Assembly (NCBI GenBank): GCA_950097015.1
Contig: CATNEN010000009.1
Span: forward strand, 372,001-436,000
DNA length: 64,000 nucleotides
Direction of reading: 5' to 3'
Source of the DNA: Macrostomum hystrix
Lineage: Eukaryota > Animalia > Platyhelminthes
Part shown: positions 29,101-61,100 of the stretch, piece by piece
Layout: each line of letters opens with the position of its first letter
Position numbering within the stretch: position 1 is the first letter of the stretch
The notes under the pieces: generated by a model
Seen by the model: the letters and a program-made list of their open reading frames with translations, nothing else
Told to the model about the DNA's origin: nothing
Database searches by the model: none
Made by a program: the position numbers and the translations under genes

Positions 29101-30987
29101 CTGCTTGGGAAGGCGGGCATCATCTGATGCCCGGTGCCATGGGCCCTGGCCCGCGCACGCCCGAAGAAGAAGAAGAAGAAGAAGCTCCTCTTCCTCGCGC
29201 ACCGCGCTGTCCGCGGCTGCTGATGGTGGCGACCGTCGCAGCCAGGTCCGCCAGCTGCTCCTGCATCTGCTCCAGCCGGTCCGCCACTTGGCTGCTCACC
29301 GATGTTACCGCGATGCTTGCAGAGGCGCCTCTGCCGCCGATGCTCTCAAGAGCCGTGGCGCGGTCCGCCAGCTGCTCCGGGCTGCTGCTGCTGCAGTCAG
29401 CGTCTTTCAGCAACGCTTCGCGAATCTCCTTCGACAGCAGAGCCAGCAGTCGGTGTCGCACTTCGCAGTCTCTCACCGTCTGATCGTGGTCAGGGCGTGC
29501 CTTCCGGTACAGGAGCTTGAGTGCGTGGCACAGCTCCCTCAGCGACTCTCCTTGGCGTCGCTTCCGGCTCTCGAACTCCGACATGGCGCAGAACGAGTTC
29601 TCCTTGCCACGGTAGAACTTGACCAGCTCGTCCTTGATGGTCGCGAAGCTCTTCTTCTTCTCCTCCGGCAGGTCCCACACGAAGACGAGCGCCTCGCCAG
29701 ATAAGAGCAGCCGGATTTTCGATGCCATCTTTTTGTTGTCCCACTCGGAATCCGTGGCGAAGTCCTCAAACATTTGCAGCCACATGTTGATGTCGGCATC
29801 GTCTGAGCCGGAGAACTTGGGTGGCAAAAGTGCATTGGCGTGCGCCATGAGTGAGTGGGCCGACTTGAGATAGAGACCGCTGCCACCAATGTAAACTAGG
29901 TCAGAAGGCGAGACTTGCGCGAGAACCGAGAAAACACGAGGTGACTAAAGCCTTAAGTGAGCGACTTTATATTTGGCTATGTACACCAGAGAGTGTACAT
30001 CGCATTGCACAATTTGCGAAGCCAACTTACGACGCGATGCGAGAATGAATCACCGCACACCTTACAGAGTCTATTTTATCAGTACCGATACCCACTAGGT
30101 TTGAGTCTATTTTATAAGTACCGATATCCACTCGGTTTGAGTCTATTTTATCAGTACCGATATCCACTCGGTTTGAGTCTATTTTATCAGTACCGATATC
30201 CACTAGGTTTGAGTCTATTTTATCAGTACCGATACCCACTAGGTTTGAGTCCCACCTTCGCCAAAAGACAACTGAATCCCATGCAAGCTCAGAAGCAACT
30301 TTCGCTGTACGGTAAAACCCCGAGCACTTCATGTTCAGAGTAAAATACCCCAGCACAACCTTTGCTTACCATCAACCCTGAGCACTTGGTATGCAGAACG
30401 CAATAATCCCAACACAACCTTTGCTTACCATCAACCCTGAGCACTTGGTATGCAGAACGCAATAATCCCAACACAACCTTTGCTTACCATCAACCCTGAG
30501 CACTTGGTATGCAGAACGCAATAATCCTAGCACAACCTTGGCTTACCATCAACCCTGAGCACTTGGTATGCAGAACGCAATAATCCTAGCACAACCTTGG
30601 CTTCTCCTGCAGGCTCTGAGCGGCACAGCCGAGTCGCGCTTTGGGTACCGCAAAACCACTTTGTCCACGGAGGCGCAAACACAGCCGCTGCTGGGCATAA
30701 GTTCGCTGAAGGCGCTTCAGACGCTCGAAGAGAATGAGACGGCCGAGTTCTGCAACTTGCTGACCAGCCTGAAGACAAGCAAACCAGCGGAGCCGAATTT
30801 CGACACCGACCCAGCTGCAGCCGACGAACTGCTGGAGACGGCGCCCAAAGCTTTCTATGAGTGCCTTCGCTACCACAGTCTCGTGCCGATCCGGCGTTTC
30901 GATCGCGACTTTCTGCACTCTGAATTCAGCCGTCCCGCCGGCTCCGTCATGCTGAGCCGTGCCGTGTCCAAATTTCGCTCCAGCTGA
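23123..30987 (+). CDS. Orphan predicted single-pass membrane protein (~258 aa), two-exon model 23123-23524 + 30613-30987
   Basis: Exon 1 has a hydrophobic helix (YVLLPVLIFVAIFALFNAVALFILWF) and an acidic patch (LTDSDEEF), and ends at CAG|GTGCGA in phase 0. Exon 2 follows CTTCTCCTGCAG| in phase 0, is GC3-rich and is open for 124 codons. The join across 7 kb is inferred; an unspliced 155-aa ORF (23123-23590) is the alternative. Confidence 0.55.
23612..24582. repeat. 36-bp minisatellite GAGTCTATTTTATCAGTACCGATA(C/T)CCACT(A/C)GGTTT, left part (~27 copies)
   Basis: Tandem array cut by the Gypsy insertion at GAGT; resumes at 30067. Confidence 0.96.
24583..24759 (-). repeat. 3' LTR of Gypsy element (177 bp)
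   Basis: TGTAAACT...CCTTACA; matches 29890-30066 except at 2 positions. Confidence 0.97.
24871..28491 (-). CDS. pol: Gypsy Pol (protease, RT, RNase H, integrase with GPY/F module), reached by -1 frameshift
   Basis: Uninterrupted ORF with FDTGAQ (PR), YMDD (RT), CDSSG / SDHKPL / NVVADALSR (RH), H..GH..C zinc finger, VDIKG / HSDQG / VERFNRTL (DDE) and WLGPYRV. Confidence 0.96.
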   Translation of the reverse strand, partial: GKLLRTGDRGPSPALPSKAQTASLFLPGSIAGRPCRWLFDTGAQVTLVSAAQFRALGVAAQLHPPLSTPVGIDGRRLESPACATLAIQLGGLPPMEHPVTVVADIQPECVLGMDVISKMCSTFSVDLMSSSVLLGSTRIPVLPDRNSMPACRVVPTAVIARVASTVSIPARSRVIIPVKVASYVEQGLFEPSSDFVDKTGLLPNRALVVSSADGNLPVGVCNLSADPVVLYQNQAIGNFDAAEPHGPDGEAAEEAGFNINPELSRSQREVIEALLNQHELAFASHEFDLGTTHLLQHEINLEPGSHPIKHRQRTVPLNFRQQVDDKISEMLRYGIIEPSCSPWASNLLVVRKKNNEIRICTDWRALNSCTVKDAYPLPPLSVALDALTGSSWFSTLDLRQGFLQVELREQDREKTAFYTTQGLMQYRKLGFGLCNAPATFQRLMDLTMAGLNWTEVLTYMDDLILFSTTFEQHAQTLKEVLGRLQSAGLKLNKRKSCFCFQEVEYLGHKISADGIQPTQDKVSAIQSIPTPECAEDVRRLVGMLGFYRRFVPHFASIANPLHQATQKSRQFRWTAECEAALRELKSALSAPPVLKLPDFSKGFRLCCDSSGVAIAGVLSQLHEGVECPVAYASRVLNKAERNYSTTHRELLAVVWAMKHFRNYLASAGEILVFSDHKPLQGLLNTKEPEGRLARWITLLQEINFKLLFRPGRENVVADALSRAAATRLTPAWSDEEISAAQADDPVLAAARQVLIGRRPRRGKAADDAESLVRSENLELGEDGVIRRSGFPVIPLQLRQELLRQLHDDPASGHLGLDRTLARVVNRAWWPGLKDDVQHWVSSCEVYQRRKVPHQHQRAPLQDNTVPSTPWEMVQVDIKGPLPATEAGQKYIICFTDVFSKWVEAAPATNIETRTVAEAMLRSVVLRHGSPEVIHSDQGRQFESDVFQELCRLLDIRKTRTTPFHPSGNPVVERFNRTLGDMLAAYCMEQQDRWAAFLPYVIWAYNSSVHSTTKRSPYAVLHGRDPRIPAELSLPAAGERPVVTNALADARAGLQLVRQRLQSTQRSRKQQYDKRQHFTPFQVGQLVMLNNPAVQKGQSKALRRRWLGPYRVLEKLGPVTYRISKPTGRRRSSVVHHDRLKAFVARRPQPAVPQPAADPPAAESDRPPSPAADPRETWQELLDEPAPAGPRRSNRTRRQPDFFVAQF
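28479..29848 (-). pseudogene. gag: Gypsy gag, interrupted by LINE insertion
   Basis: MAHANALLPPKFSGSD...RGARGRGA continues in frame into RGRGSGRGK-CFNCAQPGHLAAQC...CSRCSGKGHRAEVC...GNF* once 28663-29195 (insertion plus one TSD copy) is removed. Confidence 0.92.
28663..29183 (+). mobile_element. 5'-truncated LINE 3' fragment (521 bp) nested in gag
   Basis: Encodes a LINE ORF2 C-terminus (LSRRHERLICQLR...CRLCGEGDETAAHVLLACP, stop at 29127), a short 3' UTR and a (GAA)7 tail at 29163-29183. Flanked by the 12-bp TSD GCTCCTCTTCCT (28651-62, 29184-95). Confidence 0.93.
29890..30066 (-). repeat. 5' LTR of Gypsy element (177 bp)
   Basis: Followed on the minus strand by the PBS and the gag ATG. Confidence 0.97.
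30067..30250. repeat. 36-bp minisatellite, right part (~5 copies)
   Basis: Same unit as 23612-24582, resuming in register after the TSD. Confidence 0.95.
30350..30600. repeat. 59-bp minisatellite (~4.5 copies)
   Basis: Unit TTTGCTTACCATCAACCCTGAGCACTTGGTATGCAGAACGCAATAATCCCAACACAACC; ends at the acceptor 30611-12. Confidence 0.92.
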
Positions 30988-43337: not shown

Positions 43338-44107
43338 TGCGCAGAAACAAACAGCTATTCCCTTAGATAGTGAATTTTTCTAAAAGAAAGTGACCCGCAT
43401 TGAAGCTCGTCTTTGTTGCTCCTGAGCTGCTCTTTGAGTCCTCTTCTTATTCAAATCCCATCTCTTGCTGGGATTATCTGGGTAAAAAATCGTGAGCTCC
43501 CAAGCAGGCGGTCCCCGCCCACTTCTCCTTCTCTGCTTATTTTCAACTGCGTTTTCAAGCGCATTGCTTCGTGACTGTCCTGAGCACAGGATAAGAATAG
43601 GCCGGTGCTCAGCCCGCTCCGGCTGATAAACTGTCTCCGGAGAGGCTGATTGAGTCCCTTGCCAAGGAAACGGATGGACTGAGCCTGGGCTCACTGGCAG
43701 ACCCGCGCAATCGTCACTCTCGCTGACTGCGCCCGGCCCGCAATCTGCTGTCGACCCGCCCACTCGAAGGCGAGAGGCAGATCACGGAGAGTGGAGTGAT
43801 TTATTGCATGCTGCTCAGCCTCTTATCGCAAAGCCGCAGCATCCAGGCCTGAGTTCGCATCCCTCAACATAAAACTTCGGCTTTCTTGCAACAAAACTAA
43901 TTAGGCAGAACTTCCTCTACCTGAGCGTAGCCAGCTGTTCCCGATAGCTTGTTTTGAAGCCTACCTTTATATTTACAAGTTTAGAATGATGGCCAGACTT
44001 GCACATAAGCTGGCATCGTGGGGCGGAAGGGCACTGCTGCACTCGCAGCAGTGAATACGATTTATAGCTAGCAGTTATTGCCACAAGTTAGCCAGTGGCC
44101 CAGACAC

Positions 44108-45592
44108 AGGAGTATCCAAAATGACACCCGTGTACACAAGAGTATCCAAAATGACACCCGTGTACACAAGAGTATCCAAAAAAACACATGTGTACACAAG
44201 AGTATCCAAAATAACACATGTGTACACAAGAGTATCCAAAATAACACCCGTGTACACAAGAGTATCCAAAATGACACCCGTGTACACAAGAGTATCCAAA
44301 ATAACACATGTGTACACAAGAGTATCCAAAATGACACCCGTGTACACAAGAGTATCCAAAATAACACATGTGTACACAAGAGTATCCAAAATGACACCCG
44401 TGTACACAAGAGTATCCAAAATGACACCCGTGTACACAAGAGTATCCAAACCGGCACTCATGTACTCAGGAGTACCCAAACCGGCACTCATGTACTCAGG
44501 AGTACCCAAACCGGCACTCATGTACTCAGGAGTACCCAAACCGGCACTCATGTACTCAGGAGTACCCAAACCGGCACTCATGTACTCAGGAGTACCCAAA
44601 CCGGCACTCATGTACTCAGGAGTACCCAGACCGGCACTCATGTACTCAGGAGTACCCAAACCGGCACTCATGTACTCAGGAGTACCCAAACCGGCACTCA
44701 TGTACTCAGGAGTACCCAAACCGGCACTCATGTACTCAGGAGTACCCAAACCGGCACTCATGTACTCAGGAGTACCCAAACCGGCACTCATGTACTCAGG
44801 AGTACCCAAACCGGCACTCATGTACTCAGGAGTACCCAAACCGGCACTCATGTACTCAGGAGTACCCAAACCGGCACTCATGTACTCAGGAGTACCCAAA
44901 CCGGCACTCATGTACTCAGGAGTACCCAAACCGGCACTCATGTACTCAGGAGTACCCAAACCGGCACTCATGTACTCAGGAGTACCCAAACCGGCACTCA
45001 TGTACTCAGGAGTACCCAAAACGGCACTCATGTACTCAGGAGTACCCAAACCGGCACTCATGTACTCAGGAGTACCCAAACCGGCACTCATGTACTCAGG
45101 AGTACCCAAACCGGCACTCATGTACTCAGGAGTACCCAAACCGGCACTCATGTACTCAGGAGTACCCAAACCGGCACTCATGTACTCAGGAGTACCCAAA
45201 CCGGCACTCATGTACTCAGGAGTACCCAAACCGGCACTCATGTACTCAGGAGTACCCAAACCGGCACTCATGTACTCAGGAGTACCCAAAACGGCACTCA
45301 TGTACTCAGGAGTACCCAAACCGGCACTCATGTACTCAGGAGTACCCAAACCGGCACTCATGTACTCAGGAGTACCCAAACCGGCACTCATGTACTCAGG
45401 AGTACCCAAACCGGCACTCATGTACTCAGGAGTACCCAAAACGGCACTCATGTACTCAGGAGTACCCAAACCGGCACTCATGTACTCAGGAGTACCCAAA
45501 CCGGCACTCATGTACTCAGGAGTACCCAAACCGGCACTCATGTACTCAGGAGTACCCAAACCGGCACTCATGTACTCAGGAGTACCCAAACC
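44108..45592. repeat. Biphasic 30-bp minisatellite: A-type GAGTATCCAAAATGACACCCGTGTACACAA to ~44450, then B-type GAGTACCCAAACCGGCACTCATGTACTCAG
   Basis: Both blocks have period 30 and are in register; units differ at 8 of 30 positions. Confidence 0.97.
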
Positions 45593-46169
45593 CAAATACT
45601 CCAAATGCGGTGCCTGGTAAAGATGGCGATCAGGGTTGCGAATATTTTCTCTCACTTTTGGCACGACTTGCTGTCCTGTCCGTCGCGGCAGCGGCATGAT
45701 GAGGATCTTGAATGCGAGGATTTTTTCCTATTTTCGTCACCGGGTGGACAAAGGGTATAATTATTATAAGGGCATGGAAGCTCAGCAGCTGAGGGTCTGT
45801 GAAGTGCGGCAGTGATTGTGGGCTCCAAAAAACCGTGATTCTTCACAGATTTGTGCTTCTGCATGCAGTGTGAGATCAGGAAAATAATGACAGCATGGCG
45901 CTTTACCTAACGCCCTCTCAGCCAATGGAGGAAAAGTCGCTCTGGCTGCTTGCCTATTGGCTGTGGCTCGCTTACTCGCCTACTGCAGTTTGATTTCGGC
46001 CAACAACAATTTGCATTTCAGTGGATTTTATTTCGACACCATTTTTATCGCTTCTATCTGGACATTCCTACTTATAGTAGATCACTTGGGAAATTTATTT
46101 CAGGATTCAGGGAAGAGAATCTGAAATAGAGTTCGAATCACAAATTCTCTGTTAAAGAGAGAGAGGGAG

Positions 46170-50425: not shown

Positions 50426-52150
50426 GAATACCGGGCCAGATTCCAGGTAGACGAATTGGTAAATGTAAAAGTGGTGCTGTAGGGGATCAAACAGACGCAT
50501 GGTGCGATGAGTGTGAAGATAGATTTATTATCAGGCCTCCCAGTATTTAGTATGGCATAGAGTGCAGTGTCGACCATTTACAGGTGTGCCCAGCTTGCAT
50601 AAACAGCTGGCATGGATTCCATAGCCTGATGCGAGCGGCACTCGGTTCCATAAGCCCAGGCCAGCCCAGGAAAGGTGAAGAAAGCAAGGCAGAGCTGAGC
50701 TGAGCACTGGCTGCGCCTGTAGCTCACAGGTGAGCCCAAATGGTTTCGGTTGAATTCTCTCTGGCTTGAGTATCCAAATTGTGGCCATTGAATCCGTGCG
50801 GGCCGGGCCTGTGGCCTGGCTGGGCCCAGCTGAGCCTTTGTTTGTCGGTCCGTATTGAATTTCACTGCTAGCCTGTGAGCCAAGGCTGTGTGAGGAGGCT
50901 AAGCTGAGTTCAGCTCATGCGGCTCTGCATAGCTAAGCAGCACTCGAATTATGCCCTCTGCACCCTCGGTGCAAGGTGTGTAATGGTTGCGAGGTGCGAA
51001 GGAACTGTATCCACAAGACTTGAGCAATGTAGAAAACTTTGGTTACTGCATGCCAAAGCTTGAGGAACTGCTCAGCTCATGGCCAATACCGTGACTCTCA
51101 CTGCTTCTCTCTCTGCAGTACTTTCTCTGCTCACCTGTCATGCTGAGTTGGTAACTGCTTCTGTTTAACAGCAGCTCTGCCTGTAAACCATGCGCCTAAT
51201 TTATGCGCATTTCATTTGTTTATTATATTTGTTCACTATTGTTCATTTTCATGAATAGCGTTTGCTATTCCCGGCTTTCAATTCGGTATCGACCTTCAGG
51301 GCCAGGTGCACTTTTAGCATTTGTATTCCAAAGTTGCGCAAGCCACATAAATCCTCAATGGAACAGAATCCAATGGGCTGAAGCAAAGCACTGAGCATTT
51401 CTTCACGCATATAACGGAGAGCACTAATTAATTGGTGATTTCTCAGCGATAAGAAGGACAAAGCTGAGACAGGCACCAGAGCTGACTGTCAGAAATCAGA
51501 TAAATTAATCTCACTTCTCTGTGAAGACAACAACAGGAAACAGTGGGCTTTGCTACAGGAAGCAGCAAATTTTGGCAAAGCATTCTGATCAGCCGAGCAA
51601 CCGGAGTTCGCACCATCCGCCATGGTGCATTTACAGATTTCAGTCCTGACAAGAACTGTGCTGCAGGCGGATATTTTAAGCAGAGTTTTGCAGATTTTCT
51701 GAGAAGGCGCCCTTGACCCTTTGGTCAGCCAGCCCCGCTCCCCTGTCCTCAGTCAGTCCTCAGCAGAGTGCAGTGGACCTAACGCTGGCAAAGGCAGCGG
51801 TATTATCTTGATGATCATCAGCTCTGGCTATTGCTTTTGTTTATGCTGTGCGCCACACAGACATAAGCCCACTGCCTGTAGTTTAAGTGATGACTTTTGG
51901 CTAAAATTGCGAAGCTTGGCGCTCGCAGAACAGAAACAGCTGGGGGTGGGGGCCGCTAGCTAACTCTATGCGCTTGTGTTTCCGCTGATCCAGCCCCTGC
52001 GTTTGCCTACAAAATCAAAATATCTTCTTGCACCCTGCGAGTGAGTCGCGTGTTGTTCTGAGTCTAACTCTCATGGCACAGCCTCACACTGAGCGCCCCA
52101 CCCCCCACAGACCAACACCCCACGATTCGCCTCCCACGAACCAATAGGAG

Positions 52151-55100
52151 ATGGCCAATCTATTTGGGCCCTCTCCCTATAAATTTTCAAGTGGCAAAAC
52201 AAGCGGAGTCCAGAGCAAAGTGAAATATCTGCCTTTCCAGCCTATCCTCAATCCGAAGGAGAGACAATCCCTCACAGGGTGCATAAAAACAAGCCAAGTG
52301 TGGAAGGAGTCTCAGCTCATCTGTTTATCCGATCCAAGTTCTGATCTTACTGACGCTATTCCACCGCGAGCGCAAATGTCGCCTGTCAAAGAGCAGCGAA
52401 GCGGCGCACCCTTCAACAGCCCAGTGCCAACAATACTGAGCGGCGATCTCCTGGATCAGCAGCTCAATAGCAAGCGGCGGTCCCGCCTTGACGAATTCCT
52501 CACTAATAACAGCTGCAGCAGCGATTCTCTGGCTCGCGTCACCCATGTGCTGTGCTGCCCCACCTGCCCCTTCATGAGCCTGCAGGAATCGGTCCTGGTT
52601 GAGCACACCGCTACCTGCAGTGGCATGGACAGCTCAAAGCCCAACAGCAGTGTCAGCAGCATCAGCAGCAGTGTGATAGTGCACCGCTGCTGTCTGTGCC
52701 TGGGCACCTCCACAGAGCTGGACCTCATGCGAGAGCACATGGCCATCTATCATGGACTGTGCAAGGGAGAGGTGAGCTAGGCTTATAGTCCTTCAACCTG
52801 CTGTTTCTATGCATATCCAGTCAATTTTCAGGAACTAATCAGAATTACTAACTATTTGGTCGTTGTGTAGACGTAGCTAGCTAGTTACAAACTTACAATC
52901 TAGGATAGGACCAATATTCGATGCAAATCAAATATTACTAGTGAAACTTTCATTTCTGAGGCATTCACACGGCATATGATTTCTTTGAAACTATTATTAC
53001 TCAGCTCGTTAGTAAGTTTATTAAGATTAGTAAAGTTGCTGACTGAACTGCATATAATTCAACAGTGTTTTTTAGATTGAGTAACTAACTTTGTCAACAA
53101 AAAGATCTGAAAATATTATTATTATTTATAAACTGTTATTTTGCCCTAACAATAGCTGCATGCCGCAATGCAACTGATAAGAAAGAGCGGCGCATTTGAT
53201 CTACCCCCTGTTGTTCAAGGCCCCATAAATAGCTCATCTACTAATTGATCGCGGGTGTTAACACCTATTACTAACTTCTCTGAGCCCAAACCCCCTGCTG
53301 GAGTTCAAAACGCAGGCCACTTCACAGGGTGTGAAATTGGGGTTCTCAAATTGTTTAGGTCTGTGATCTCCCTTCCCCTACCCTGCCCTGCCGAGTCTTC
53401 TGTGCAATCTGCTCACAGTCGCTAGCACCTGGAATTTTGGCAGATCAGATTACCTGAGAGAATGGAATACCTTAGCATCCCAAGTTTTATGCAAATCCAG
53501 ATCCTACCCTGTGCGTCCAGCAGTGCCAAGTCTCCAACCGAGTGTGGGCGCGGAATGAAGACAAATAGACAAAGACTTGTCATTTGCTTTCCTTGCCTGG
53601 GCTCAAACTCGAATTCCGGAATCGAGTCGCCTATTGTGTAATCTATGCTAGGGATTGACACAATGGGGCGTCAGGGTGGGAACTGGGGCTGTCTGATGCT
53701 AGTTGGGGCAGTTTTTCGGCACTGGATTCACACCCTTCCATGGGGTCCTGCTGCGAGACTTTGCGAGACTTCCAGCATTGCTATCTCAGTGGCATGGAAT
53801 GCTTACTCAACTACCACTCCCCATACATTCCAGGCTGATCTGCAGCTCACCTGGAGTCGAGTCAGCCCTGGCCGCTCCGTCGACACTGTCGGCCCTGCAC
53901 CAACCGGATCCAGGAAAAGGAAGAGTCACGTGCCGGTAAGCCGTTTGCGTCCCCTCTGCCTACTGGATGCCCTCTGCTCACTGAATGCCCTCTGCTCACT
54001 GAATTCCCTCTGCTCACTGAATGCCCTCTGCTCACTCAATGCCCTCTGCTCACTGAATGCCCTCTGCTCACTCAATGCCCTCTGCTCACTGAATTCCCTC
54101 TGCTCACTGAATGCCCTCTGCTCACTGAATGCCCTCTGCTCACTGAATGCCCTCTGCCTACTGGATGCCCTCTGCTCACTCAATGCCCTCTGCTCACTGA
54201 ATTCCCTCTGCTCACTCAATGCCCTCTGCTCACTGAATGCCCTCTGCTTACTGAATGCCCTCTGCTCACTGAATGCCCTCTGCTCACTTAATGCCCTCTG
54301 CTCACTCAATGCCCTCTGCTCACTGAATGCCCTCTGCTCACTGAATTCCCTCTGCTCACTGAATGCCCTCTGCTCACTCAATGCCCTCTGCTCACTGAAT
54401 GCCCTCTGCTCACTGAATGCCCTCTGCTCACTGAATGCCCTCTGCTCACTCAATGCCCTCTGCTCACTGAATGCCCTCTGCTCACTGAATGCCCTCTGCT
54501 CACTCAATGCCCTCTGCTCACTCAATGCCCTCTGCTCACTGAATGCCCTCTGCTCACTGGATGCCCTCTGCTCACTGAATGCCCTCTGCTCACTGAATGC
54601 CCTCTGCCCACTGGATCCCATCTGCTCACTGAATGCCCTCTGCTCACTGGATGCCCTCTGCCCACTGGATGCCCTCTGCCAACTGGATGCCCTCTGCCAA
54701 CTGGATGCCCTCTGCCAACTGGATGACTTCTGCCTACTGGACGCCCCTCTGCCACTTTCCCTACCCTCTTCCATCTCTGCCCCTCCACCCCCATAAACCC
54801 TCTGCTCCCTCATCTACCCCTTAGCCACCACCTCTTACCCCTCTATACCTCATCTGCCCCTCTACTGTGCTCTCCTGCGCTGTTTCCTCTGCGTTTATTT
54901 GTTTCCGGCCCTTTATTTCCGACAGTCCATCTCACTGCCACTCCGCCAGTCCACCTCACTGCCACTCCGCCAGTCCAGCTAACTGTTACTCCGCCAGTCC
55001 ATCTCACTGCCACTCCGCCAGTCCACCTCACTGCCACTCCGCCAGTCCAGATAACTGTTACTCCGCCAGTCCATCTCACTGCCACTCCGCCAGTCCATCT

Positions 55101-55898
55101 CACTGCCACTCCGCCAGTCCACCTCACTGTTACTCCGCCAGTCCATCTCACTGCCACTCCGCCAGTCCACCTCACTGCCACTCCGCCAGTCCAGATAACT
55201 GTTACTCCGCCAGTCCATCTCATTGTCACTACACCAGTCCACCTCACTGTTACTCCGTCAGTCCATCTCACTGTTACTCCGTCAGTCCAGATAACTGTTA
55301 CTCCGCCAGTCCATCTCACTGCCACTCCGCCAGTCCATCTCACTGCCACTCCGCCAGTCCACCTCACTGTTACTCCGCCAGTCCATCTCACTGCCACTCC
55401 GCCAGTCCACCTCACTGCCACTCCGCCAGTCCAGATAACTGTTACTCCGCCAGTCCATCTCATTGTCACTACACCAGTCCACCTCACTGTTACTCCGTCA
55501 GTCCATCTCACTGTTACTCCGTCAGTCCATCTCGCAGCTCTCAGTACTGGTATTAATTTGGCTTATTCGCAGAGCTAAAAGTTTCTCAGACCTGTCTGGC
55601 CCATGCAGCCAGCTGCAGTCAACGGGTGTGAGACTCCGGTGATGGCTCACAGCTCATGCTGAACTTCGCAGCATTTATTTTCAACTTTCTGCCGACCTGC
55701 TTGCCATCTGTGATTCTGGGCTTTGCAGTTGCTCTGACTCTCATTTTGGAAATTTGCGCACGGCACCGGAGGGGTGGCTAGCGACCCACCGCCTGTCTGT
55801 GCAGCGCTTACAATGTGAGCCTGTCACTGCGACTGCTCTTGTGACTCCACTTTTGGAGCTAGCGGCTCACCCGCCTGCTTTCTGCTCCTCTGCGAGCC

Positions 55899-55931
<33 letters not shown>

Positions 55932-57603
55932 TGCTGCGTACACTGAAGTAGCAATCGGAGACTTTTAGATAGTAATCCAGTCCGCGGAGAGAAACTTGGA
56001 GTTTTCAGTTCGTACAGAGGGAGTATTGTGAGAAATCGGAACAAGGAAAGGCAGAATGCACCGAGACGTTTAATCCTCAGCTCTTCCTATTTGTCCGGCG
56101 GCTCTCCGACCTTGAGTTCTCCTCGATAAATCAAGCAACCGTTCCCACGAGCTGCACCCAGCCGCTGCGGAACCTCCACTTGTCGCAGTGAAAATTGATG
56201 CCAATTGATGGCCGCCCAGCTTCGAGGCATCGGTAGCGGAAACTTTACATGGCAGGCATAAATCACCGGCCCCTCACGGTGCTAGAGCAGGTTGCTCTGC
56301 CTGTTCCGCGGCCCCAGTTGCTGGACAGCCGGAGTTTCCTCCACCATTGAGTTCCCTGAGAGCTGCACCTTGCCTTCTCCGCAGTCACCGCTATTCGATT
56401 CGGAGACCCGAGATAAATTTATGAGAAGGGCTCATGAGCCACCGAAGCCTGGCAGATTTGCCATTTGCCTGCCAGCAGCCCTGACCCAATTTGCTGACTC
56501 TGCAACTTGAGCTCAGCTAGAAACTCGAGAACTCCAACAACCCTCCGCCTGTGCTGCCTTCCCCATCGCTCACTTTCCCCAGGCCGAGCTCAGTGGCTGG
56601 TCTTTGTACGTGAGTGCGGCGCGGTCACTCGGTGCCGGTTATTTCCTTGACTGCTACCTGATACTCCTCACTTCTGCGAGTCTTTATCGCTTTTGGAATT
56701 CTCGGCGTCTGTAATATTGATAAGGCTGGATTTACAAAACTCAGTTAGAAAGCTAGAATCTCTATGAGGCTATTGTTCCGAAAAATCAAACCGATTCGTT
56801 TGTATTCTCTGCCCAACCTGTACAGGAGCGAATCCACAGCCTGTGGACAGCACAGGTGTCAGCCGCCGACTGCCCAAAGTCTCCGAAAATGCTGCTGATG
56901 TCGGTTGGAGACGGCGACTGTCCTAAGGTAAGCTGTTCTCACTATTTCCCTCTCCCATTCCAACTCGTAACCAACTCAACCTGATGCCCCGAACTGCCAG
57001 GCCGCAGTCGCCAGTCCTCTCGATGTCGCGTCGCCCGCCACAGCCAACTGCGACATCCTGGACCTGAGCCTGAAGCGGCTGGCCGACGCCTCCAGCGCCG
57101 ATGAAGCCGCTGAGGCGTCCCCACCGAAGGCCAGGCAGCAGAAGCAGCAGAAGCTGCAGAGGCAGGACTCGCAGGAGCAGAGTTTGGTGGGCAAGCCGCA
57201 GCGGCAGAACTTCTCGGACGCGCAGAACAGCCTGCTGCAGAGCTGGTTCTCAGAGCACCGGGACAAGCCCTACCCCAGCACCGCGGACACTCGCCAGCTG
57301 GCCGAGCTGACGCGCCTGAACTACTCGCAGGTGAAGAAGTGGTTTGCCAACAGGCGCATGCGCACGAAGACTCCCGGCTCTGCTGGACTGCTCGCCAGCG
57401 ACGGGCTGTGCGGGGTGAGTCTGTGTTCTTGCACTCTTGATTTCCTCAGTTTATAACAAATGGAAAAGTCACTTCATTCCCCTGATCCCCAACGCCCCTC
57501 CGACATCCCACAGGAGCTAACCTTCAGCGAGATGTCGTCTGGCAAGGCCTCGCCCAGCAATTTGTCAGCGACCGACTTCCGCTCTGAGAACTCGCCGGCC
57601 TAG
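52151..57603 (+). CDS. Zinc-finger + TALE-class homeodomain protein (multi-exon model)
   Basis: Exons 52151-52771 (CPTC...H...C and CCLC...H...H fingers), 53834-53935 (RKRK; tentative), 56826-56927, 57001-57414 (ILDLS motif and homeodomain) and 57514-57603 all join in phase 0 with GT-AG ends. The homeodomain is certain; its linkage to the ZF exon is inferred. Confidence 0.65.
53950..54750. repeat. 18-bp minisatellite GAATGCCCTCTGCTCACT
   Basis: About 44 copies, beginning ~15 nt after the GTAAGC donor at 53936. Confidence 0.96.
54920..55530. repeat. 24-bp minisatellite CCGCCAGTCCA(T/C)CTCACTG(CC/TT)ACT with higher-order structure
   Basis: Tandem array; a block of roughly 240 bp appears repeated. 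Confidence 0.93.
57001..57414 (+). CDS. TALE homeobox exon
   Basis: PQRQNFSDAQNSLLQSWFSEHRDKPYPSTADTRQLAELTRLNYSQVKKWFANRRMR: three-amino-acid loop extension with PYP, and a WFxN helix 3. Confidence 0.93.
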
Positions 57604-58134
57604 TTCGCCTCGCACTCGCGTCAGCTACTTAGCTGCGGAGGAGTTAGTAGTATATCGCGCAGAGTGACTTCAAAGTGGAAAATATTTTAAAACGCTCGTC
57701 TTAGTGTTTTCTTAGCAGCCACCCATTTGCCCTAGAGCTTTGTCTTCCTGTCTGCGGCTGAGCGGGCGAGCTGCCGTTTGTACATTCGAGTGCTTGGTGC
57801 TTGCTTCACTGCTAGCCTTACCGTGTCTGCCTTGTTTCTGTGCAATTTTCTTTATCACCCACCGTATGCAATTTTTACAACTTTTATTTTTAGCGCGTCA
57901 GCTAGACTGCTAAGCTCTCAATTTGCTCACAGTACATCCCGAATGTGCACTTTTAACTCTTAATATGTTACGCAATCGCTATTCACTTGGAAGATGATGC
58001 AAAATACACAGTTCTGTGTCTGCAGCGACTCGTTTCACTTTTGCGCAGCTCGCTGCTTTTGGTGCTAACTGCTCAAATTATTGTGACTGAGCTTTGACTA
58101 ATATCTATTTTGACTGCCATTTAACTTAGGCTCC

Positions 58135-61100
58135 AAAGCCCTGACAGACTCATATACAGACTCATATATATATATATATATCTGCTGCTCTGACACCCTC
58201 ACAGCCCTGACAGACTCATGTATATATATCTGCTGCTCTGACACCCTCACAGCCCTGACAGACTCATGTATATATATCTGCTGCTCTGACACCCTCACAG
58301 CCCTGACAGACTCATGTATATATATCTGCTGCTCTGACCCCCTCACAGCCCTGACAGACTCATGTATATATATATATCTGCTGCTCTGACACCCTCACAG
58401 CTCTGACAGACTCATGTATATATATCTGCTGCTCTGACACCCTCACAGCCCTGACAGACTCATGTATATATATATATCTGCTGCTCTGACACCCTCACAG
58501 CCCTGACAGACTCATGTATATATATCTGCTGCTCTGACACCCTCACAGCTCTGACAGACTCATGTATATATATCTGCTGCTCTGACACCCTCACAGCCCT
58601 GACAGACTCATGTATATATATATCTGCTGCTCTGACACCCTCACAGCTCTGACAGACTCATGTATATATATCTGCTGCTCTGACACCCTCACAGCCCTGA
58701 CAGACTCATGTATATATATATCTGCTGCTCTGACACCCTCACAGCTCTGACAGACTCATGTATATATATATCTGCTGCTCTGACACCCTCACAGCTCTGA
58801 CACCCTCACAGCTCTGACAGACTCATGTATATATATCTGCTGCTCTGACACCCTCACAGCCCTGACAGACTCATGTATATATATATATCTGCTGCTCTGA
58901 CACCCTCACAGCTCTGACAGACTCATGTATATATATCTGCTGCTCTGACACCCTCACAGCTCTGACAGACTCATGTATATATATCTGCTGCTCTGACACC
59001 CTCACAACTCTGACAGACTCATGTATATATATCTGCTGCTCTGACACCCTCACAGCCCTGACAGACTCATGTATATATATCTGCTGCTCTGACACCCTCA
59101 CAGCTCTGACAGACTCATGTATATATATATCTGCTGCTCTGACACCCTCACAGCTCTGACAGACTCATGTATATATATCTGCTGCTCTGACACCCTCACA
59201 GCTCTGACAGACTCATGTATATATATATCTGCTTCTCTGACACCCTCACAGCCCTGACAGACTCATGTATATATATCTGCTGCTCTGACACCCTCACAGC
59301 TCTGACAGACTCATGTATATATATCTGCTGCTCTGACACCCTCACAGCCCTGACAGACTCATGTATATATATATATCTGCTGCTCTGACACCCTCACAGC
59401 TCTGACAGACTCATGTATATATATCTGCTGCTCTGACACCCTCACAGCCCTGACAGACTCATGTATATATATATATCTGCTGCTCTGACACCCTCACAGC
59501 CCTGACAGACTCATGTATATATATCTGCTGCTCTGACACCCTCACAGCTCTGACAGACTCATGTATATATATCTGCTGCTCTGACACCCTCACAGCCCTG
59601 ACAGACTCATGTATATATATATCTGCTGCTCTGACACCCTCACAGCTCTGACAGACTCATGTATATATATCTGCTGCTCTGACACCCTCACAGCCCTGAC
59701 AGACTCATGTATATATATATCTGCTGCTCTGACACCCTCACAGCTCTGACAGACTCATGTATATATATATCTGCTGCTCTGACACCCTCACAGCTCTGAC
59801 AGACTCATGTATATATATCTGCTGCTCTGACACCCTCACAGCCCTGACAGACTCATGTATATATATATATCTGCTGCTCTGACACCCTCACAGCCCTGAC
59901 AGACTCATGTATATATATCTGCTGCTCTGACACCCTCACAGCTCTGACAGACTCATGTATATATATCTGCTGCTCTGACACCCTCACAGCCCTGACAGAC
60001 TCATGTATATATATATCTGCTGCTCTGACACCCTCACAGCTCTGACAGACTCATGTATATATATCTGCTGCTCTGACACCCTCACAGCCCTGACAGACTC
60101 ATGTATATATATATCTGCTGCTCTGACACCCTCACAGCTCTGACAGACTCATGTATATATATATCTGCTGCTCTGACACCCTCACAGCTCTGACACCCTC
60201 ACAGCTCTGACAGACTCATGTATATATATCTGCTGCTCTGACACCCTCACAGCCCTGACAGACTCATGTATATATATATATCTGCTGCTCTGACACCCTC
60301 ACAGCTCTGACAGACTCATGTATATATATCTGCTGCTCTGACTCCCTCACAGCTCTGACAGACTCATGTATATATATCTGCTGCTCTGACACCCTCACAA
60401 CTCTGACAGACTCATGTATATATATCTGCTGCTCTGACACCCTCACAGCCCTGACAGACTCATGTATATATATCTGCTGCTCTGACACCCTCACAGCTCT
60501 GACAGACTCATGTATATATATATCTGCTGCTCTGACACCCTCACAGCCCTGACAGACTCATGTATATATATCTGCTGCTCTGACACCCTCACAGCTCTGA
60601 CAGACTCATGTATATATATATCTGCTTCTCTGACACCCTCACAGCCCTGACAGACTCATGTATATATATCTGCTGCTCTGACACCCTCACAGCTCTGACA
60701 GACTCATGTATATATATCTGCTGCTCTGACACCCTCACAGCCCTGACAGACTCATGTATATATATATATCTGCTGCTCTGACACCCTCACAGCTCTGACA
60801 GACTCATGTATATATATCTGCTGCTCTGACACCCTCACAGCCCTGACAGACTCATGTATATATATATATCTGCTGCTCTGACACCCTCACAGCCCTGACA
60901 GACTCATGTATATATATCTGCTGCTCTGACACCCTCACAGCTCTGACAGACTCATGTATATATATCTGCTGCTCTGACACCCTCACAGCCCTGACAGACT
61001 CATGTATATATATATCTGCTGCTCTGACACCCTCACAGCTCTGACAGACTCATGTATATATATCTGCTGCTCTGACACCCTCACAGCCCTGACAGACTCA

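What the first reader, a model, noticed from the sequence alone, without database searches (positions are those of the whole stretch)
52151..57603. Zinc fingers + CtBP-type motif + atypical TALE homeodomain apparently in one protein
Seen: a TALE homeodomain (PYP loop) with recognition helix WFANRRMR. Its Ala50 is Irx/Mkx-like, but it lacks their ARRR and differs from Meis/TGIF (WFINARRR) and Pbx (WFGNKRIR). An ILDLSLK motif (57055-75) and a PLDVA motif precede it. An upstream exon encodes a C2HC-like and a C2H2-like finger, and all intervening exons join in phase 0. Established: the animal zinc-finger homeobox classes (ZEB, ZFHX, TSHZ, ZHX, ADNP) use non-TALE homeodomains; PxDLS recruits CtBP; spiralians have lineage-specific TALE expansions (SPILE-type). 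Inference: a lineage-specific ZF-TALE repressor with an architecture I do not know from classical TALE families.
Basis: partly seen in the sequence, partly recalled or inferred. Interest (0 to 1): 0.72.

Follow-up and report, generated by a model that had tools for sequence, protein, structure and literature searches.

The report
Flatworm zinc-finger TALE homeobox gene
This is a real, expressed five-exon gene of a Macrostomum flatworm that joins two zinc fingers to a TALE-type homeodomain; the same layout is kept in tapeworms and flukes, where databases label the gene "extradenticle/PBX", so it marks a flatworm-wide transcription-factor family that I did not find described in the papers I could search.

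Summary
RNA-derived contigs from four runs join exons 52151-52771, 53834-53935, 56826-56927, 57001-57414 and 57514-57603 at GT..AG introns, all in phase 0. One contig links the second zinc finger to the homeobox and the 3'UTR.

The product (442 codons, never joined here) has these parts:
- a C2HC finger and a C2H2 finger
- a GSRKRKS basic motif
- an ILDLSLK motif
- a 63-residue TALE homeodomain

The genome holds three paralogues with the same layout, and each has a one-to-one Macrostomum lignano partner.

A profile search of 1.84 billion proteins found homeodomains of this type only in named flatworms (Macrostomum, flukes, tapeworms), plus one unnamed metagenome fragment. Many of those proteins carry the same finger pair near residues 60-130. 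In a tree the family is one well-supported clade, apart from this genome's own Pbx, Irx and Meis/Pknox genes. Its closest solved homeodomain is Exd/PBX1, but it has no PBC domain.

The [A/I/V]LDLS motif matches experimentally validated non-canonical CtBP sites. It occurs only in Macrostomum, and binding is untested.

Verdict: a new variant of a known kind, a flatworm-wide ZF-TALE family. The scan had already noted the same layout on two other pieces of this genome.

The parts
52021..52150 (+). 5' untranslated part of exon 1 (furthest upstream RNA contig starts at 52021); in-frame stop at 52145-52147 just before the ATG
   Evidence: table 8 (X1 record 1 from 52021, X2 record 6 from 52082, X4 record 14 from 52095); sequence
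52151..52771 (+). Exon 1 coding part, 207 codons: poorly conserved N-terminus followed by the zinc-finger pair
52556..52618 (+). Zinc finger 1, C-x2-C-x12-H-x3-C (C2HC here and in the M. lignano orthologue; C2H2 with H-x4-H in all other family members)
   Evidence: invariant C11, C14, H27; beta-beta-alpha, pLDDT about 90
52688..52753 (+). Zinc finger 2, C-x2-C-x12-H-x4-H with invariant S-T after the knuckle
   Evidence: (invariant C55, C58, S62, T63, H71, H76)
53834..53935 (+). Exon 2, 34 codons, phase 0
   Evidence: joints 52771|53834 and 53935|56826
53906..53926 (+). GSRKRKS basic motif (NLS-like by inference), conserved at the end of the matching exon in all four paralogues and in M. lignano
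53936..56825 (+). Intron 2 (2890 nt) holding two minisatellites: 18-mer x 44.7 (53952-54756) and 24-mer x 25.7 (54918-55533)
56826..56927 (+). Exon 3, 34 codons, phase 0; not conserved with M. lignano P0013
57001..57414 (+). Exon 4, 138 codons: linker with the CtBP-like motif, Q-rich stretch, homeodomain
57055..57075 (+). ILDLSLK motif; the family consensus in Macrostomum is [A/I/V]-L-D-L-[S/T]-[L/V]-K
   Evidence: literature
57190..57378 (+). TALE homeodomain (63 residues): R5, PYP loop, W48 F49 A50 N51 R52 R53 M54 R55
57514..57603 (+). Exon 5 coding part with stop 57601-57603; the C-terminal ...FRSENSPA is shared with M. lignano; the 3'UTR continues beyond 57800

Best explanation
The locus is one expressed five-exon gene of a Macrostomum flatworm. 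It encodes a nuclear transcription factor of about 442 residues in which an N-terminal pair of classical beta-beta-alpha zinc fingers is joined to a C-terminal TALE homeodomain. It is one of four paralogues in this genome.

It belongs to a family found across Platyhelminthes: Macrostomum, trematodes and cestodes. The family keeps two things. One is the finger pair near the N-terminus. The other is a homeodomain with the signature RQNF..QN..L..W(F/Y)..H..KPYP...DTK.L.....L.Y.QVKKWFAN(K/R)R.

Shown here:
- the single transcript
- the domain layout
- conservation of the layout
- separation from Pbx, Irx and Meis/Pknox

Inferred:
- The homeodomain binds DNA. R5, W48, F49, N51, R53 and R55 are all intact, and Ala50 gives a specificity of its own.
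- The finger pair adds a second DNA-contacting or partner-contacting module.
- GSRKRKS acts as a nuclear localisation signal.
- In Macrostomum the [A/I/V]LDLS[L/V]K motif recruits CtBP, making these copies repressors.
For: One transcript: all four GT..AG joints are seen in each of four runs, with contigs spanning 52603-57800 and 52095-57070 at 0 mismatches.

Domains:
- Pfam gives Homeobox_KN 1.5e-14.
- The homeodomain aligns without gaps to Exd/PBX1 at E 3e-9.
- The finger pair folds as two beta-beta-alpha units with pLDDT about 90.
- As a profile the pair hits CTCF, Ikaros and BCL11A fingers.

Paralogues: on C8, C7 and C3 the finger exon lies 1-7 kb upstream of the homeobox on the same strand.

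Orthologues:
- M. lignano P0013 is colinear with exons 1, 2, 4 and 5.
- P0160 carries the fingers, RKRK, VLDLSVK and the homeodomain.

Family range:
- The best-domain score is 65-136 bits for flatworm proteins and at most 60 bits for everything else among the top 150 of 1.84 billion proteins.
- An HMM built from the four paralogues' fingers alone hits residues about 62-125 of Schistosoma, Calicophoron, Heterobilharzia and Mesocestoides proteins at 1e-9 to 1e-11.
- Proteins not used in the wider profile also match at 1e-18 to 1e-31: S. mansoni, Clonorchis, Trichobilharzia, H. microstoma, Rodentolepis.

Tree: the family clade has support 96/95. Each paralogue pairs with one M. lignano sequence, and Neodermata form one clade.

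CtBP motif: ALDLS (RAI2, Kd about 5 uM, crystal structure) and ALDLS+VLDLS (EBNA3A) bind CtBP. A CtBP gene is present in this genome (L060).
Against: - No protein, DNA-binding or interaction data exist.
- The runs are not labelled as RNA. That they are RNA is inferred from intron-skipping contigs, which cannot show level, tissue or strand.
- The CtBP-like motif and the RKRK motif were not found in fluke and tapeworm orthologues, so repression through CtBP cannot be the ancestral mechanism.
- About half of the parasite gene models lack the finger pair. I read these as truncated models but did not check.
- 'Flatworm-only' rests on the homeodomain search. Only the best 150 of 350 hits at E<=1e-10 were visible, the finger pair was never searched against the whole library, and planarian proteomes may be missing from it.
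- With 62 columns, the relations among TALE groups are unresolved.
Confidence: 0.85

Rival explanations
1. It is simply a divergent Pbx/Extradenticle paralogue, as the public names of the parasite orthologues say, and would act as a Hox cofactor.
For: Exd and PBX1 are the best solved matches (E 3e-9 to 2e-8). They share RxNF, PYPS, SQV..WF.N(K/R)R.R. This genome's Pbx is the best-scoring canonical TALE against the family profile (50.5 bits). The orthologues are named 'Homeobox protein extradenticle' or 'Pre-B-cell leukemia transcription factor 4'.
Against: - The PBC domain (PF03792) is found only at C24 and C1 in this genome, next to two near-canonical Pbx homeodomains. It is absent from C9, C8, C7 and C3 and from the exons.
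- The family has Ala50 where Pbx has Gly50.
- The family clade (96/95) excludes Pbx.
- There is a gap of more than 80 bits between family members and Pbx in the same genome.
Confidence: 0.05
2. It is the flatworm branch of one of the spiralian-specific TALE expansions (SPILE, or Paps' TALE clades III, IV or VI), and gained the zinc fingers secondarily.
For: - The next-best homeodomains after the flatworm family include a bivalve protein (Pinctada P0042, QVKKWMSNKRVR, 59.7 bits) and a chiton protein (Liolophura).
- Paps et al. give QVKK as a motif of molluscan TALE clade VI and date TALE clades III and IV to the lophotrochozoan ancestor.
- The tree does not exclude a sister relation (polytomy).
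Against: - No starred branch joins the family to any outside group.
- None of the outside proteins matched the finger-pair HMM.
- There is a score gap (at least 65 bits against at most 60).
- No named SPILE sequence could be brought into the tree.
Confidence: 0.25
3. It is a flatworm relative of the ZF-class gene ADNP, which has N-terminal C2H2 fingers and a C-terminal homeodomain.
For: - Fingers 67-126 of the Mesocestoides orthologue match positions 74-133 of Pfam ADNP_N at E 3.5e-6 and 26.3 bits, against a cut-off of 27. From memory, not checked here, those positions are ADNP's first two fingers.
- 2 of 10 family finger pairs hit ADNP_N, best E 1.1e-7.
- The overall layout is similar: fingers near residue 70, homeodomain in the last third.
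Against: - The hit is below Pfam's cut-off, and 8 of 10 members do not hit.
- Other single-finger models score as well (ZNF462 2e-7).
- A six-frame scan of this genome with ADNP_N found nothing.
- The feature search placed the protein nearest Zfhx and Tshz clusters, not ADNP.
- The ADNP homeodomain is described as very divergent and undetectable by BLAST (PMC2211742), unlike this clean TALE domain.
- The family has only two fingers; from memory, ADNP has nine.
Confidence: 0.07
4. The one-protein layout is an artefact: two neighbouring genes merged by read-through or by chimeric contig assembly.
For: The runs are assembled contigs, which can be chimeric. Intron 2 is long (2890 nt) and full of minisatellites.
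Against: - The same four joints appear in four separately assembled runs with canonical GT..AG ends and phase 0.
- There is no stop before 57601 in the spliced frame.
- Three paralogues and many orthologues in other genera keep the fingers and the homeodomain in one gene model.
Confidence: 0.02

Closest known systems
PBC class TALE homeodomain proteins (Extradenticle, PBX1-4)
   Same: 63-residue TALE homeodomain. It is the best solved match (E 3e-9, gapless over 57 residues). Shared features are RxNF in the N-terminal arm, PYPS in the loop, and WF-x-N-(K/R)-R-x-R in helix 3. The parasite orthologues carry these names in databases.
   Different: It has no PBC-A/B domain, has Ala50 instead of Gly50 and has K46 K47. 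An N-terminal C2H2 pair is present. It forms a separate clade from the two true Pbx genes of the same genome.
Animal ZF-class homeobox families (Zfhx, Zeb, Tshz, Adnp, Zhx/Homez)
   Same: C2H2-type fingers plus a homeodomain in one protein. A protein-language-model feature search puts a family member nearest Zfhx and Tshz clusters. There is a weak sub-threshold ADNP_N match. Zeb and Tshz also use PxDLS-type CtBP motifs (my knowledge).
   Different: Here there is a single TALE homeodomain and only two fingers.
Spiralian TALE expansions (SPILE; TALE clades I-VII of Paps et al. 2015)
   Same: Lineage-restricted TALE genes of Spiralia that cannot be assigned to classical classes. The QVKKW motif is shared with molluscan clade VI-like sequences.
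   Different: The papers I read on those clades do not mention zinc fingers. The flatworm family is a distinct, well-supported clade with a score gap to the molluscan sequences. Orthology is not shown.
[quoted passage not shown] 2013, as cited in Olson et al. 2018, e.g. extra-like HmN_000610200)
   Same: An extradenticle-like best BLAST hit, unassignable in gene trees, and not orthologous to planarian Pbx. The H. microstoma orthologue found here is likewise named extradenticle.
   Different: I could not map HmN_000610200 to the H. microstoma protein found here. The fingers are not mentioned in that paper. The family is not specific to parasites, since free-living Macrostomum has four copies.
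Non-canonical CtBP-binding motifs ALDLS (RAI2) and ALDLS/VLDLS (EBNA3A)
   Same: The same core [A/V]-L-D-L-S, lying in a region with no domain match. M. lignano P0013 even has two copies in tandem, as RAI2 and EBNA3A do.
   Different: The window gene has Ile at position 1, for which I found no tested example. Binding is untested, and the motif is absent from fluke and tapeworm orthologues.

Membership tests
TALE superclass | Three extra residues between helix 1 and helix 2 (63-residue homeodomain), typically a P-Y-P loop | tested here: met
   59 residues on 56 positions of Pfam Homeodomain; Homeobox_KN 1.5e-14; gapless alignment with the Exd TALE domain through ...H-RDK-PYPS
TALE superclass | Intact DNA-contacting residues (R5, W48, F49, N51, R53) | tested here: met
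   Read from the sequence and alignment A1: R4 of the alignment corresponds to R5, and WFAN(R/K)R is invariant in the full-length members
PBC class (Pbx/Exd) | PBC-A/B domain N-terminal of the homeodomain (Pfam PF03792) | tested here: not met
   PF03792 hits only C24:3909194-3910357 and C1:2889769-2890618; nothing on C9, C8, C7 or C3; no hit in the exons
PBC class (Pbx/Exd) | Gly50 and grouping with Pbx in a homeodomain tree | tested here: not met
   Ala50; the family clade at 96/95 excludes own Pbx L030
MEIS/PKNOX class | Meis_PKNOX_N (HM) domain, WFINARRR | tested here: not met
   PF16493 hits only C30, C24, C38, C32 and C3:0.54 Mb; helix 3 is WFANRRMR
IRX / MKX classes | Ala50 within WFANARRR; grouping with Irx | tested here: not met
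   Ala50 is shared, but helix 3 is N-R/K-R-M-R. This genome's own Irx (L027, L028) forms a separate 100/95 clade. No named Mkx sequence was available.
ZF-class homeobox genes | C2H2 or C2H2-like fingers together with a homeodomain | tested here: met
   Two beta-beta-alpha fingers and a homeodomain in one transcript
ZF-class homeobox genes | Homeodomain related to Zfhx, Zeb, Tshz, Adnp or Zhx homeodomains (non-TALE) | tested here: not met
   The domain is TALE. The best PDB hits are Exd, PBX, Meis and TGIF; ZHX2 reaches only 1.8e-3 over a partial stretch.
ADNP family | Match to Pfam ADNP_N above the cut-off | tested here: inconclusive
   P0104 scores 26.3 bits against a cut-off of 27; 2 of 10 members hit; none in the genome scan
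SPILE / spiralian TALE clades | Monophyly with named SPILE or TALE clade I-VII sequences | not testable with these tools
   No named SPILE sequences could be fetched. Molluscan TALE hits (Pinctada P0042) do not join the family with support.
CtBP-binding PxDLS motif | P at position 1 of P-x-D-L-S | tested here: not met
   Position 1 is I, A or V in all Macrostomum copies
CtBP-binding PxDLS motif | Core L-D-L-S followed by a basic residue, conserved among relatives, lying outside the recognised domains | tested here: met
   [A/I/V]LDL[S/T][L/V]K is in four paralogues and their M. lignano partners. ALDLS and VLDLS are validated in RAI2 and EBNA3A.
CtBP-binding PxDLS motif | Physical binding to CtBP | not testable with these tools
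   The single complex prediction returned 'no answer', which is no evidence either way

The most novel reading that the evidence does not exclude
The flatworm ZF-TALE family is the protostome counterpart of vertebrate ADNP. On this reading the N-terminal finger pair near residue 70 and the C-terminal homeodomain are homologous in both, so the 'vertebrate-only' ADNP family would descend from a TALE homeobox gene whose homeodomain later diverged beyond recognition.
Probability: 0.07. Interest if true: 0.8.

Novelty: new variant of a known kind. Interest (0 to 1): 0.55.

Why it matters
Homeobox classes are defined by homeodomain type together with companion domains. In the classifications I read (Holland 2007; Burglin and Affolter 2016), no TALE family is listed with zinc fingers.

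Here a C2H2 pair and a TALE homeodomain have stayed together since the common ancestor of Macrostomum and the parasitic flatworms, which makes this a phylum-wide class of regulator. Three things follow:
1. The 'extradenticle/PBX4' labels on the orthologues in Echinococcus, Taenia, Hymenolepis and Clonorchis are misleading, as is the 'erythrocyte membrane protein' label in Schistosoma mansoni. Studies of Hox cofactors in these parasites should not count this gene as Pbx.
2. If this gene belongs to the TALE expansion that the tapeworm literature calls parasite-specific (which I could not verify), that expansion has free-living members. It would then be an inheritance, not an adaptation to parasitism.
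3. Macrostomum lignano can be studied by RNAi and transgenesis (my knowledge, not checked here). That makes the function of the family testable, along with the gain of a CtBP-type motif in one lineage.

Tried and rejected
- No search, fold or look-up was run on the full 442-residue product. Every query was an exon or part of one, by reference.
- Word search with the homeobox exon: it found only two M. lignano fragments, because of the length window.
- Word search with the finger region: it found nothing. Given the length filter, this says little.
- Complex prediction: CtBP exon 1 (L060:2626-2970:-) with residues 1-50 of exon 4 returned 'no answer' (score 0.02, partner pLDDT under 50, controls not run). 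This is not evidence for or against binding.
- Foldseek of the finger-pair model against the PDB: no hit at E<=0.001. The top rows are generic C2H2 arrays (BCL11A, CTCF, ZBTB7A).
- Atlas feature searches: generic C2H2 clusters for the fingers and Zfhx/Tshz clusters for a full-length orthologue. These are leads only.
- ADNP_N scan of this genome: no match.
- Unnamed family-like fragment P0134: I looked for a finger exon on its contig. There is none within the 2.8 kb available upstream, so this is uninformative.
- Loose ends at 52654 and 57135 in the read layout: these lie on CAG-rich coding repeats and come from unrelated contigs, so I do not read them as alternative isoforms.
- PLDVA motif: not conserved, so dropped.
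- Olson et al.'s extra-like gene (HmN_000610200): I could not map it to the H. microstoma orthologue. Testis expression is therefore only a lead.

Full report
**The observation**

The sequence holds an ATG at 52151, preceded by an in-frame stop at 52145-52147. An open frame runs from there to a GT at 52772. My translation of the proposed exons (corrected with the read joints) gives 621, 102, 102, 414 and 90 nt. All joins are in phase 0, and the total is 443 codons including the stop at 57601-57603.

- Finger 1 is C-x2-C-x12-H-x3-C (52556-52618).
- Finger 2 is C-x2-C-x12-H-x4-H (52688-52753).
- ILDLSLK is at 57055-57075, exactly as reported.
- The homeodomain is at 57190-57378.

Pfam scores exon 4 as Homeobox_KN (1.5e-14) and Homeodomain (2.8e-12). 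It lays 59 residues on 56 model positions, which is the three-residue TALE insertion. The finger exon gets no Pfam hit above threshold.

**One transcript or two?**

The sequencing-run index found four runs of one study that hold about 30% of the words of 52000-57800. That is roughly the share that the exons and UTRs make up. Laying their contigs on the stretch gave depth on the exons and essentially none on the introns. It also gave four joints, each seen in all four runs and each with GT..AG ends: 52771|53834, 53935|56826, 56927|57001 and 57414|57514.

- X2 record 7 (1254 nt) runs from 52603, inside exon 1 and upstream of finger 2, through all four joints to 57800.
- X4 record 14 (951 nt) runs from 52095 through exons 1-3 into exon 4.
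- Both have no mismatches.

The runs are not labelled as RNA. I infer that they are RNA because their contigs skip introns. Contigs cannot give expression level, tissue or strand. The loose ends at 52654 and 57135 sit on CAG-rich coding repeats and belong to unrelated contigs.

**Organism**

The best protein hits are Macrostomum lignano entries at about 60% identity over exon 4 and 82% over the homeodomain. The genome (220 Mb, 42 contigs) is therefore a Macrostomum or close macrostomid, and not M. lignano itself.

**Paralogues**

Six-frame searches of the window's own genome with the homeobox exon and the finger exon found three further loci where both lie on the same strand with the fingers upstream:

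| Contig | Fingers | Homeodomain |
|---|---|---|
| C8 | 4231529-4231786 | 4228106-4228297 |
| C7 | 2682137-2682322 | 2681029-2681301 |
| C3 | 11001887-11002108 | 10994744-10994959 |

tblastn and ORF inspection show four shared blocks:
- ..HVLCCP.C..M.LQ......H....H
- (H/Y)RC.LC...ST....M.EH...(Y/F)H
- TGSRKRK..(V/I)P at the end of a small exon
- an [A/I/V]LDL[S/T][L/V]K motif a little upstream of the homeodomain

Only the window gene and its M. lignano partner have H-x3-C in finger 1.

The scan had already noted the same layout on two other pieces of this genome (s1-310539, s1-408220).

**Relatives elsewhere**

I searched a profile of the five Macrostomum homeodomains (A1) against 1.84 billion representative proteins. 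I then rescored the best 150 by their best single domain, which gave a clear gap.

- Scores of 65-136 bits belong to these taxa (names):
  - M. lignano proteins
  - trematode proteins of 1300-1850 residues (Echinostoma, Schistosoma mekongi, Calicophoron, Heterobilharzia, Opisthorchis)
  - cestode proteins of 560-1017 residues (Hymenolepis, Taenia, Mesocestoides)
  - one unnamed 88-residue metagenome fragment
- Everything else scores 60 bits or less, starting with a Pinctada protein.

A word search seeded on the Mesocestoides homeodomain added these orthologues:
- Echinococcus granulosus ('Homeobox protein extradenticle')
- Taenia solium ('Pre-B-cell leukemia transcription factor 4')
- Hymenolepis microstoma and Clonorchis ('extradenticle')
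- Schistosoma mansoni ('putative erythrocyte membrane protein')
- Trichobilharzia and others

**Is the layout conserved?**

An HMM built only from the four finger pairs of this genome hit residues about 62-125 of the Calicophoron, Mesocestoides, S. mekongi and Heterobilharzia proteins at 1e-9 to 1e-11. It hit nothing else among the 164 proteins held at that point, apart from M. lignano.

A wider profile (A2) then found the pair in proteins that were not used to build it, at 1e-18 to 1e-31: S. mansoni, Clonorchis, Trichobilharzia, S. spindalis, H. microstoma, Rodentolepis and an unnamed MetaClust sequence (P0192).

In all, 13 of 28 flatworm models carry both the pair, at residues about 11-151, and the homeodomain. 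I take the rest to be truncated models but did not check.

Across Macrostomum and Neodermata the invariant columns are H-V-L, both Cys and the first His of finger 1, and C, C, S-T, H, H of finger 2. AlphaFold2 on this alignment gives two beta-beta-alpha units with block pLDDT 89-91 and a low-confidence linker. As a profile the pair hits CTCF, Ikaros/Helios, BCL11A and Tramtrack fingers in the PDB. Foldseek gives only weak generic C2H2 rows.

M. lignano P0013 (419 aa) is colinear with exons 1, 2, 4 and 5 of the window gene. P0160 (552 aa) carries the fingers, RKRK, VLDLSVK and the homeodomain. These are independent gene models of the same layout.

**Which class?**

The nearest solved homeodomains are Exd and PBX1 (E 3e-9 to 2e-8), ahead of Meis (1e-7), TGIF2LX, PKNOX1 and MATalpha2. 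The same genome has canonical TALE genes:
- two Pbx genes with PBC domains
- five Meis/Pknox loci with the Meis_PKNOX_N domain
- many Irx genes

None of the PBC or Meis_N hits lies near the four ZF-TALE loci. Against the family profile the four genes score 132-140 bits, Pbx 50.5 and Irx 47.

I built a maximum-likelihood tree of 74 homeodomains (62 columns, LG+C20+F+G4, SIX as outgroup).
- All 15 family rows form one clade (ultrafast bootstrap 96, SH-aLRT 95; 98% of bootstrap trees).
- Each of the four paralogues pairs with one M. lignano sequence, so the duplications are older than the split of the two species.
- All fluke and tapeworm sequences, plus the metagenome fragment, form a single clade (98/89).
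- Relations between the family and Pbx, Irx, Meis/Pknox or the molluscan-type groups are an unresolved polytomy. A deeper affinity is neither shown nor excluded.
- Rows left out: near-duplicates of included sequences, and hits covering fewer than 45 profile positions.

**Literature**

- Paps et al. 2015 and Barton-Owen et al. 2018 describe spiralian TALE expansions without mentioning zinc fingers. Platyhelminth sequences were sparse or excluded. QVKK is given as a motif of molluscan TALE clade VI.
- Olson et al. 2018 describe a testis-expressed 'extradenticle-like' TALE gene of Hymenolepis. They call it unassignable, part of a TALE expansion 'specific to parasitic flatworms', and not orthologous to planarian Pbx. 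That description fits this family, but I could not map their gene model to the protein found here.
- I found no paper that describes a ZF plus TALE layout in flatworms. The library is incomplete.

**The CtBP-type motif**

Position 1 is I, A or V and never P, so the canonical PxDLS definition is not met. Two non-canonical sites are experimentally validated:
- ALDLS in RAI2: two copies, Kd about 5 uM each, crystal structure (PMC11187106)
- ALDLS plus VLDLS in EBNA3A (PMC2883600)

The motif is conserved in all four paralogues and their M. lignano partners. P0013 has two copies. It is absent from the fluke and tapeworm orthologues, as is the RKRK motif. A CtBP gene exists in this genome (L060). 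The one complex prediction allowed gave 'no answer' and counts for nothing.

I put CtBP recruitment by the Macrostomum copies at about even odds. It cannot be the ancestral mode of action of the family.

**ADNP lead**

The Mesocestoides finger pair matches Pfam ADNP_N positions 74-133 at 26.3 bits, with the cut-off at 27. From memory, and not checked here, those positions are ADNP's first two fingers. Two of ten family members hit that model.
- Against a link: other single-finger models score as well, the genome scan with ADNP_N is empty, and the feature search prefers Zfhx and Tshz.
- I keep it as a low-probability lead.

**Mechanism**

Shown:
- one mRNA
- two zinc-finger folds
- a TALE homeodomain with all the usual DNA-contacting residues
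- conservation of this layout across a phylum

Inferred:
- It is a sequence-specific nuclear transcription factor.
- The homeodomain gives the main DNA contact. It has Ala50, as in Irx and Mkx, but in an Antp/Pbx-like N-R/K-R-M-R helix.
- The finger pair gives a second contact or partner surface.
- GSRKRKS serves nuclear import.
- In Macrostomum, [A/I/V]LDLS recruits CtBP for repression.

**Limits**

- Only the top 150 of 350 hits at E<=1e-10 could be seen.
- The finger pair was not searched against the whole library.
- Planarian data may be missing.
- The tree has 62 columns.

Noticed in passing
window 53952-54756 and 54918-55533: Intron 2 of the gene holds two large minisatellites: an 18-mer repeated 44.7 times (92% match) and a 24-mer repeated 25.7 times (86% match). 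Each leaves long spurious ORFs on both strands. A few short RNA-run contigs touch them.
   Followed up: partly
window 58173-59000: A 48-mer tandem array (about 13 copies, with higher-order periods of 100 to 165) starts roughly 570 nt after the stop codon, near or within the 3'UTR region.
   Followed up: no
window 24874-29202 (-): An uninterrupted 1443-codon ORF with aspartyl protease, reverse transcriptase, RNase H and integrase domains (Ty3/gypsy-like retroelement pol) lies in a GC-rich block (64% GC). Observed only.
   Followed up: no
window 12302-13468 (-) and 44078-45697 (-): An ORF with a Receptor L domain (1e-22), and an ORF with Spt5 C-terminal repeats (1e-32). These are probably exons of neighbouring genes.
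   Followed up: no
L063 2826-3092 (ENA assembly ERZ25070786, contig of 13.4 kb, 41.7% GC): An unnamed metagenome contig encodes a homeodomain of this family (79-81 bits). Here it is split by an intron after QVK. In the tree it sits beside the fluke and tapeworm clade, so it may come from another flatworm lineage. No finger exon lies within the 2.8 kb upstream.
   Followed up: partly
proteins P0003-P0007 and P0094: The homeodomain profile also pulled out proteins made of 4-10 tandem TALE-like homeodomains. One is from the diatom Cyclotella; the others come from unnamed ENA, Logan and JGI contigs. Two unnamed TALE proteins also carry C2H2 fingers elsewhere in the chain (P0094, P0140). None matches the flatworm finger pair.
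   Followed up: partly
G000 C24:3909194-3910531 and C1:2889769-2890768: The genome has two Pbx genes with near-identical homeodomains. Irx and Meis/Pknox also occur in several copies, consistent with widespread recent duplication in this genome.
   Followed up: no
public records of orthologues: Orthologues carry misleading names: 'Homeobox protein extradenticle' (Echinococcus, H. microstoma, Clonorchis), 'Pre-B-cell leukemia transcription factor 4' (Taenia solium) and 'putative erythrocyte membrane protein' (Schistosoma mansoni).
   Followed up: partly
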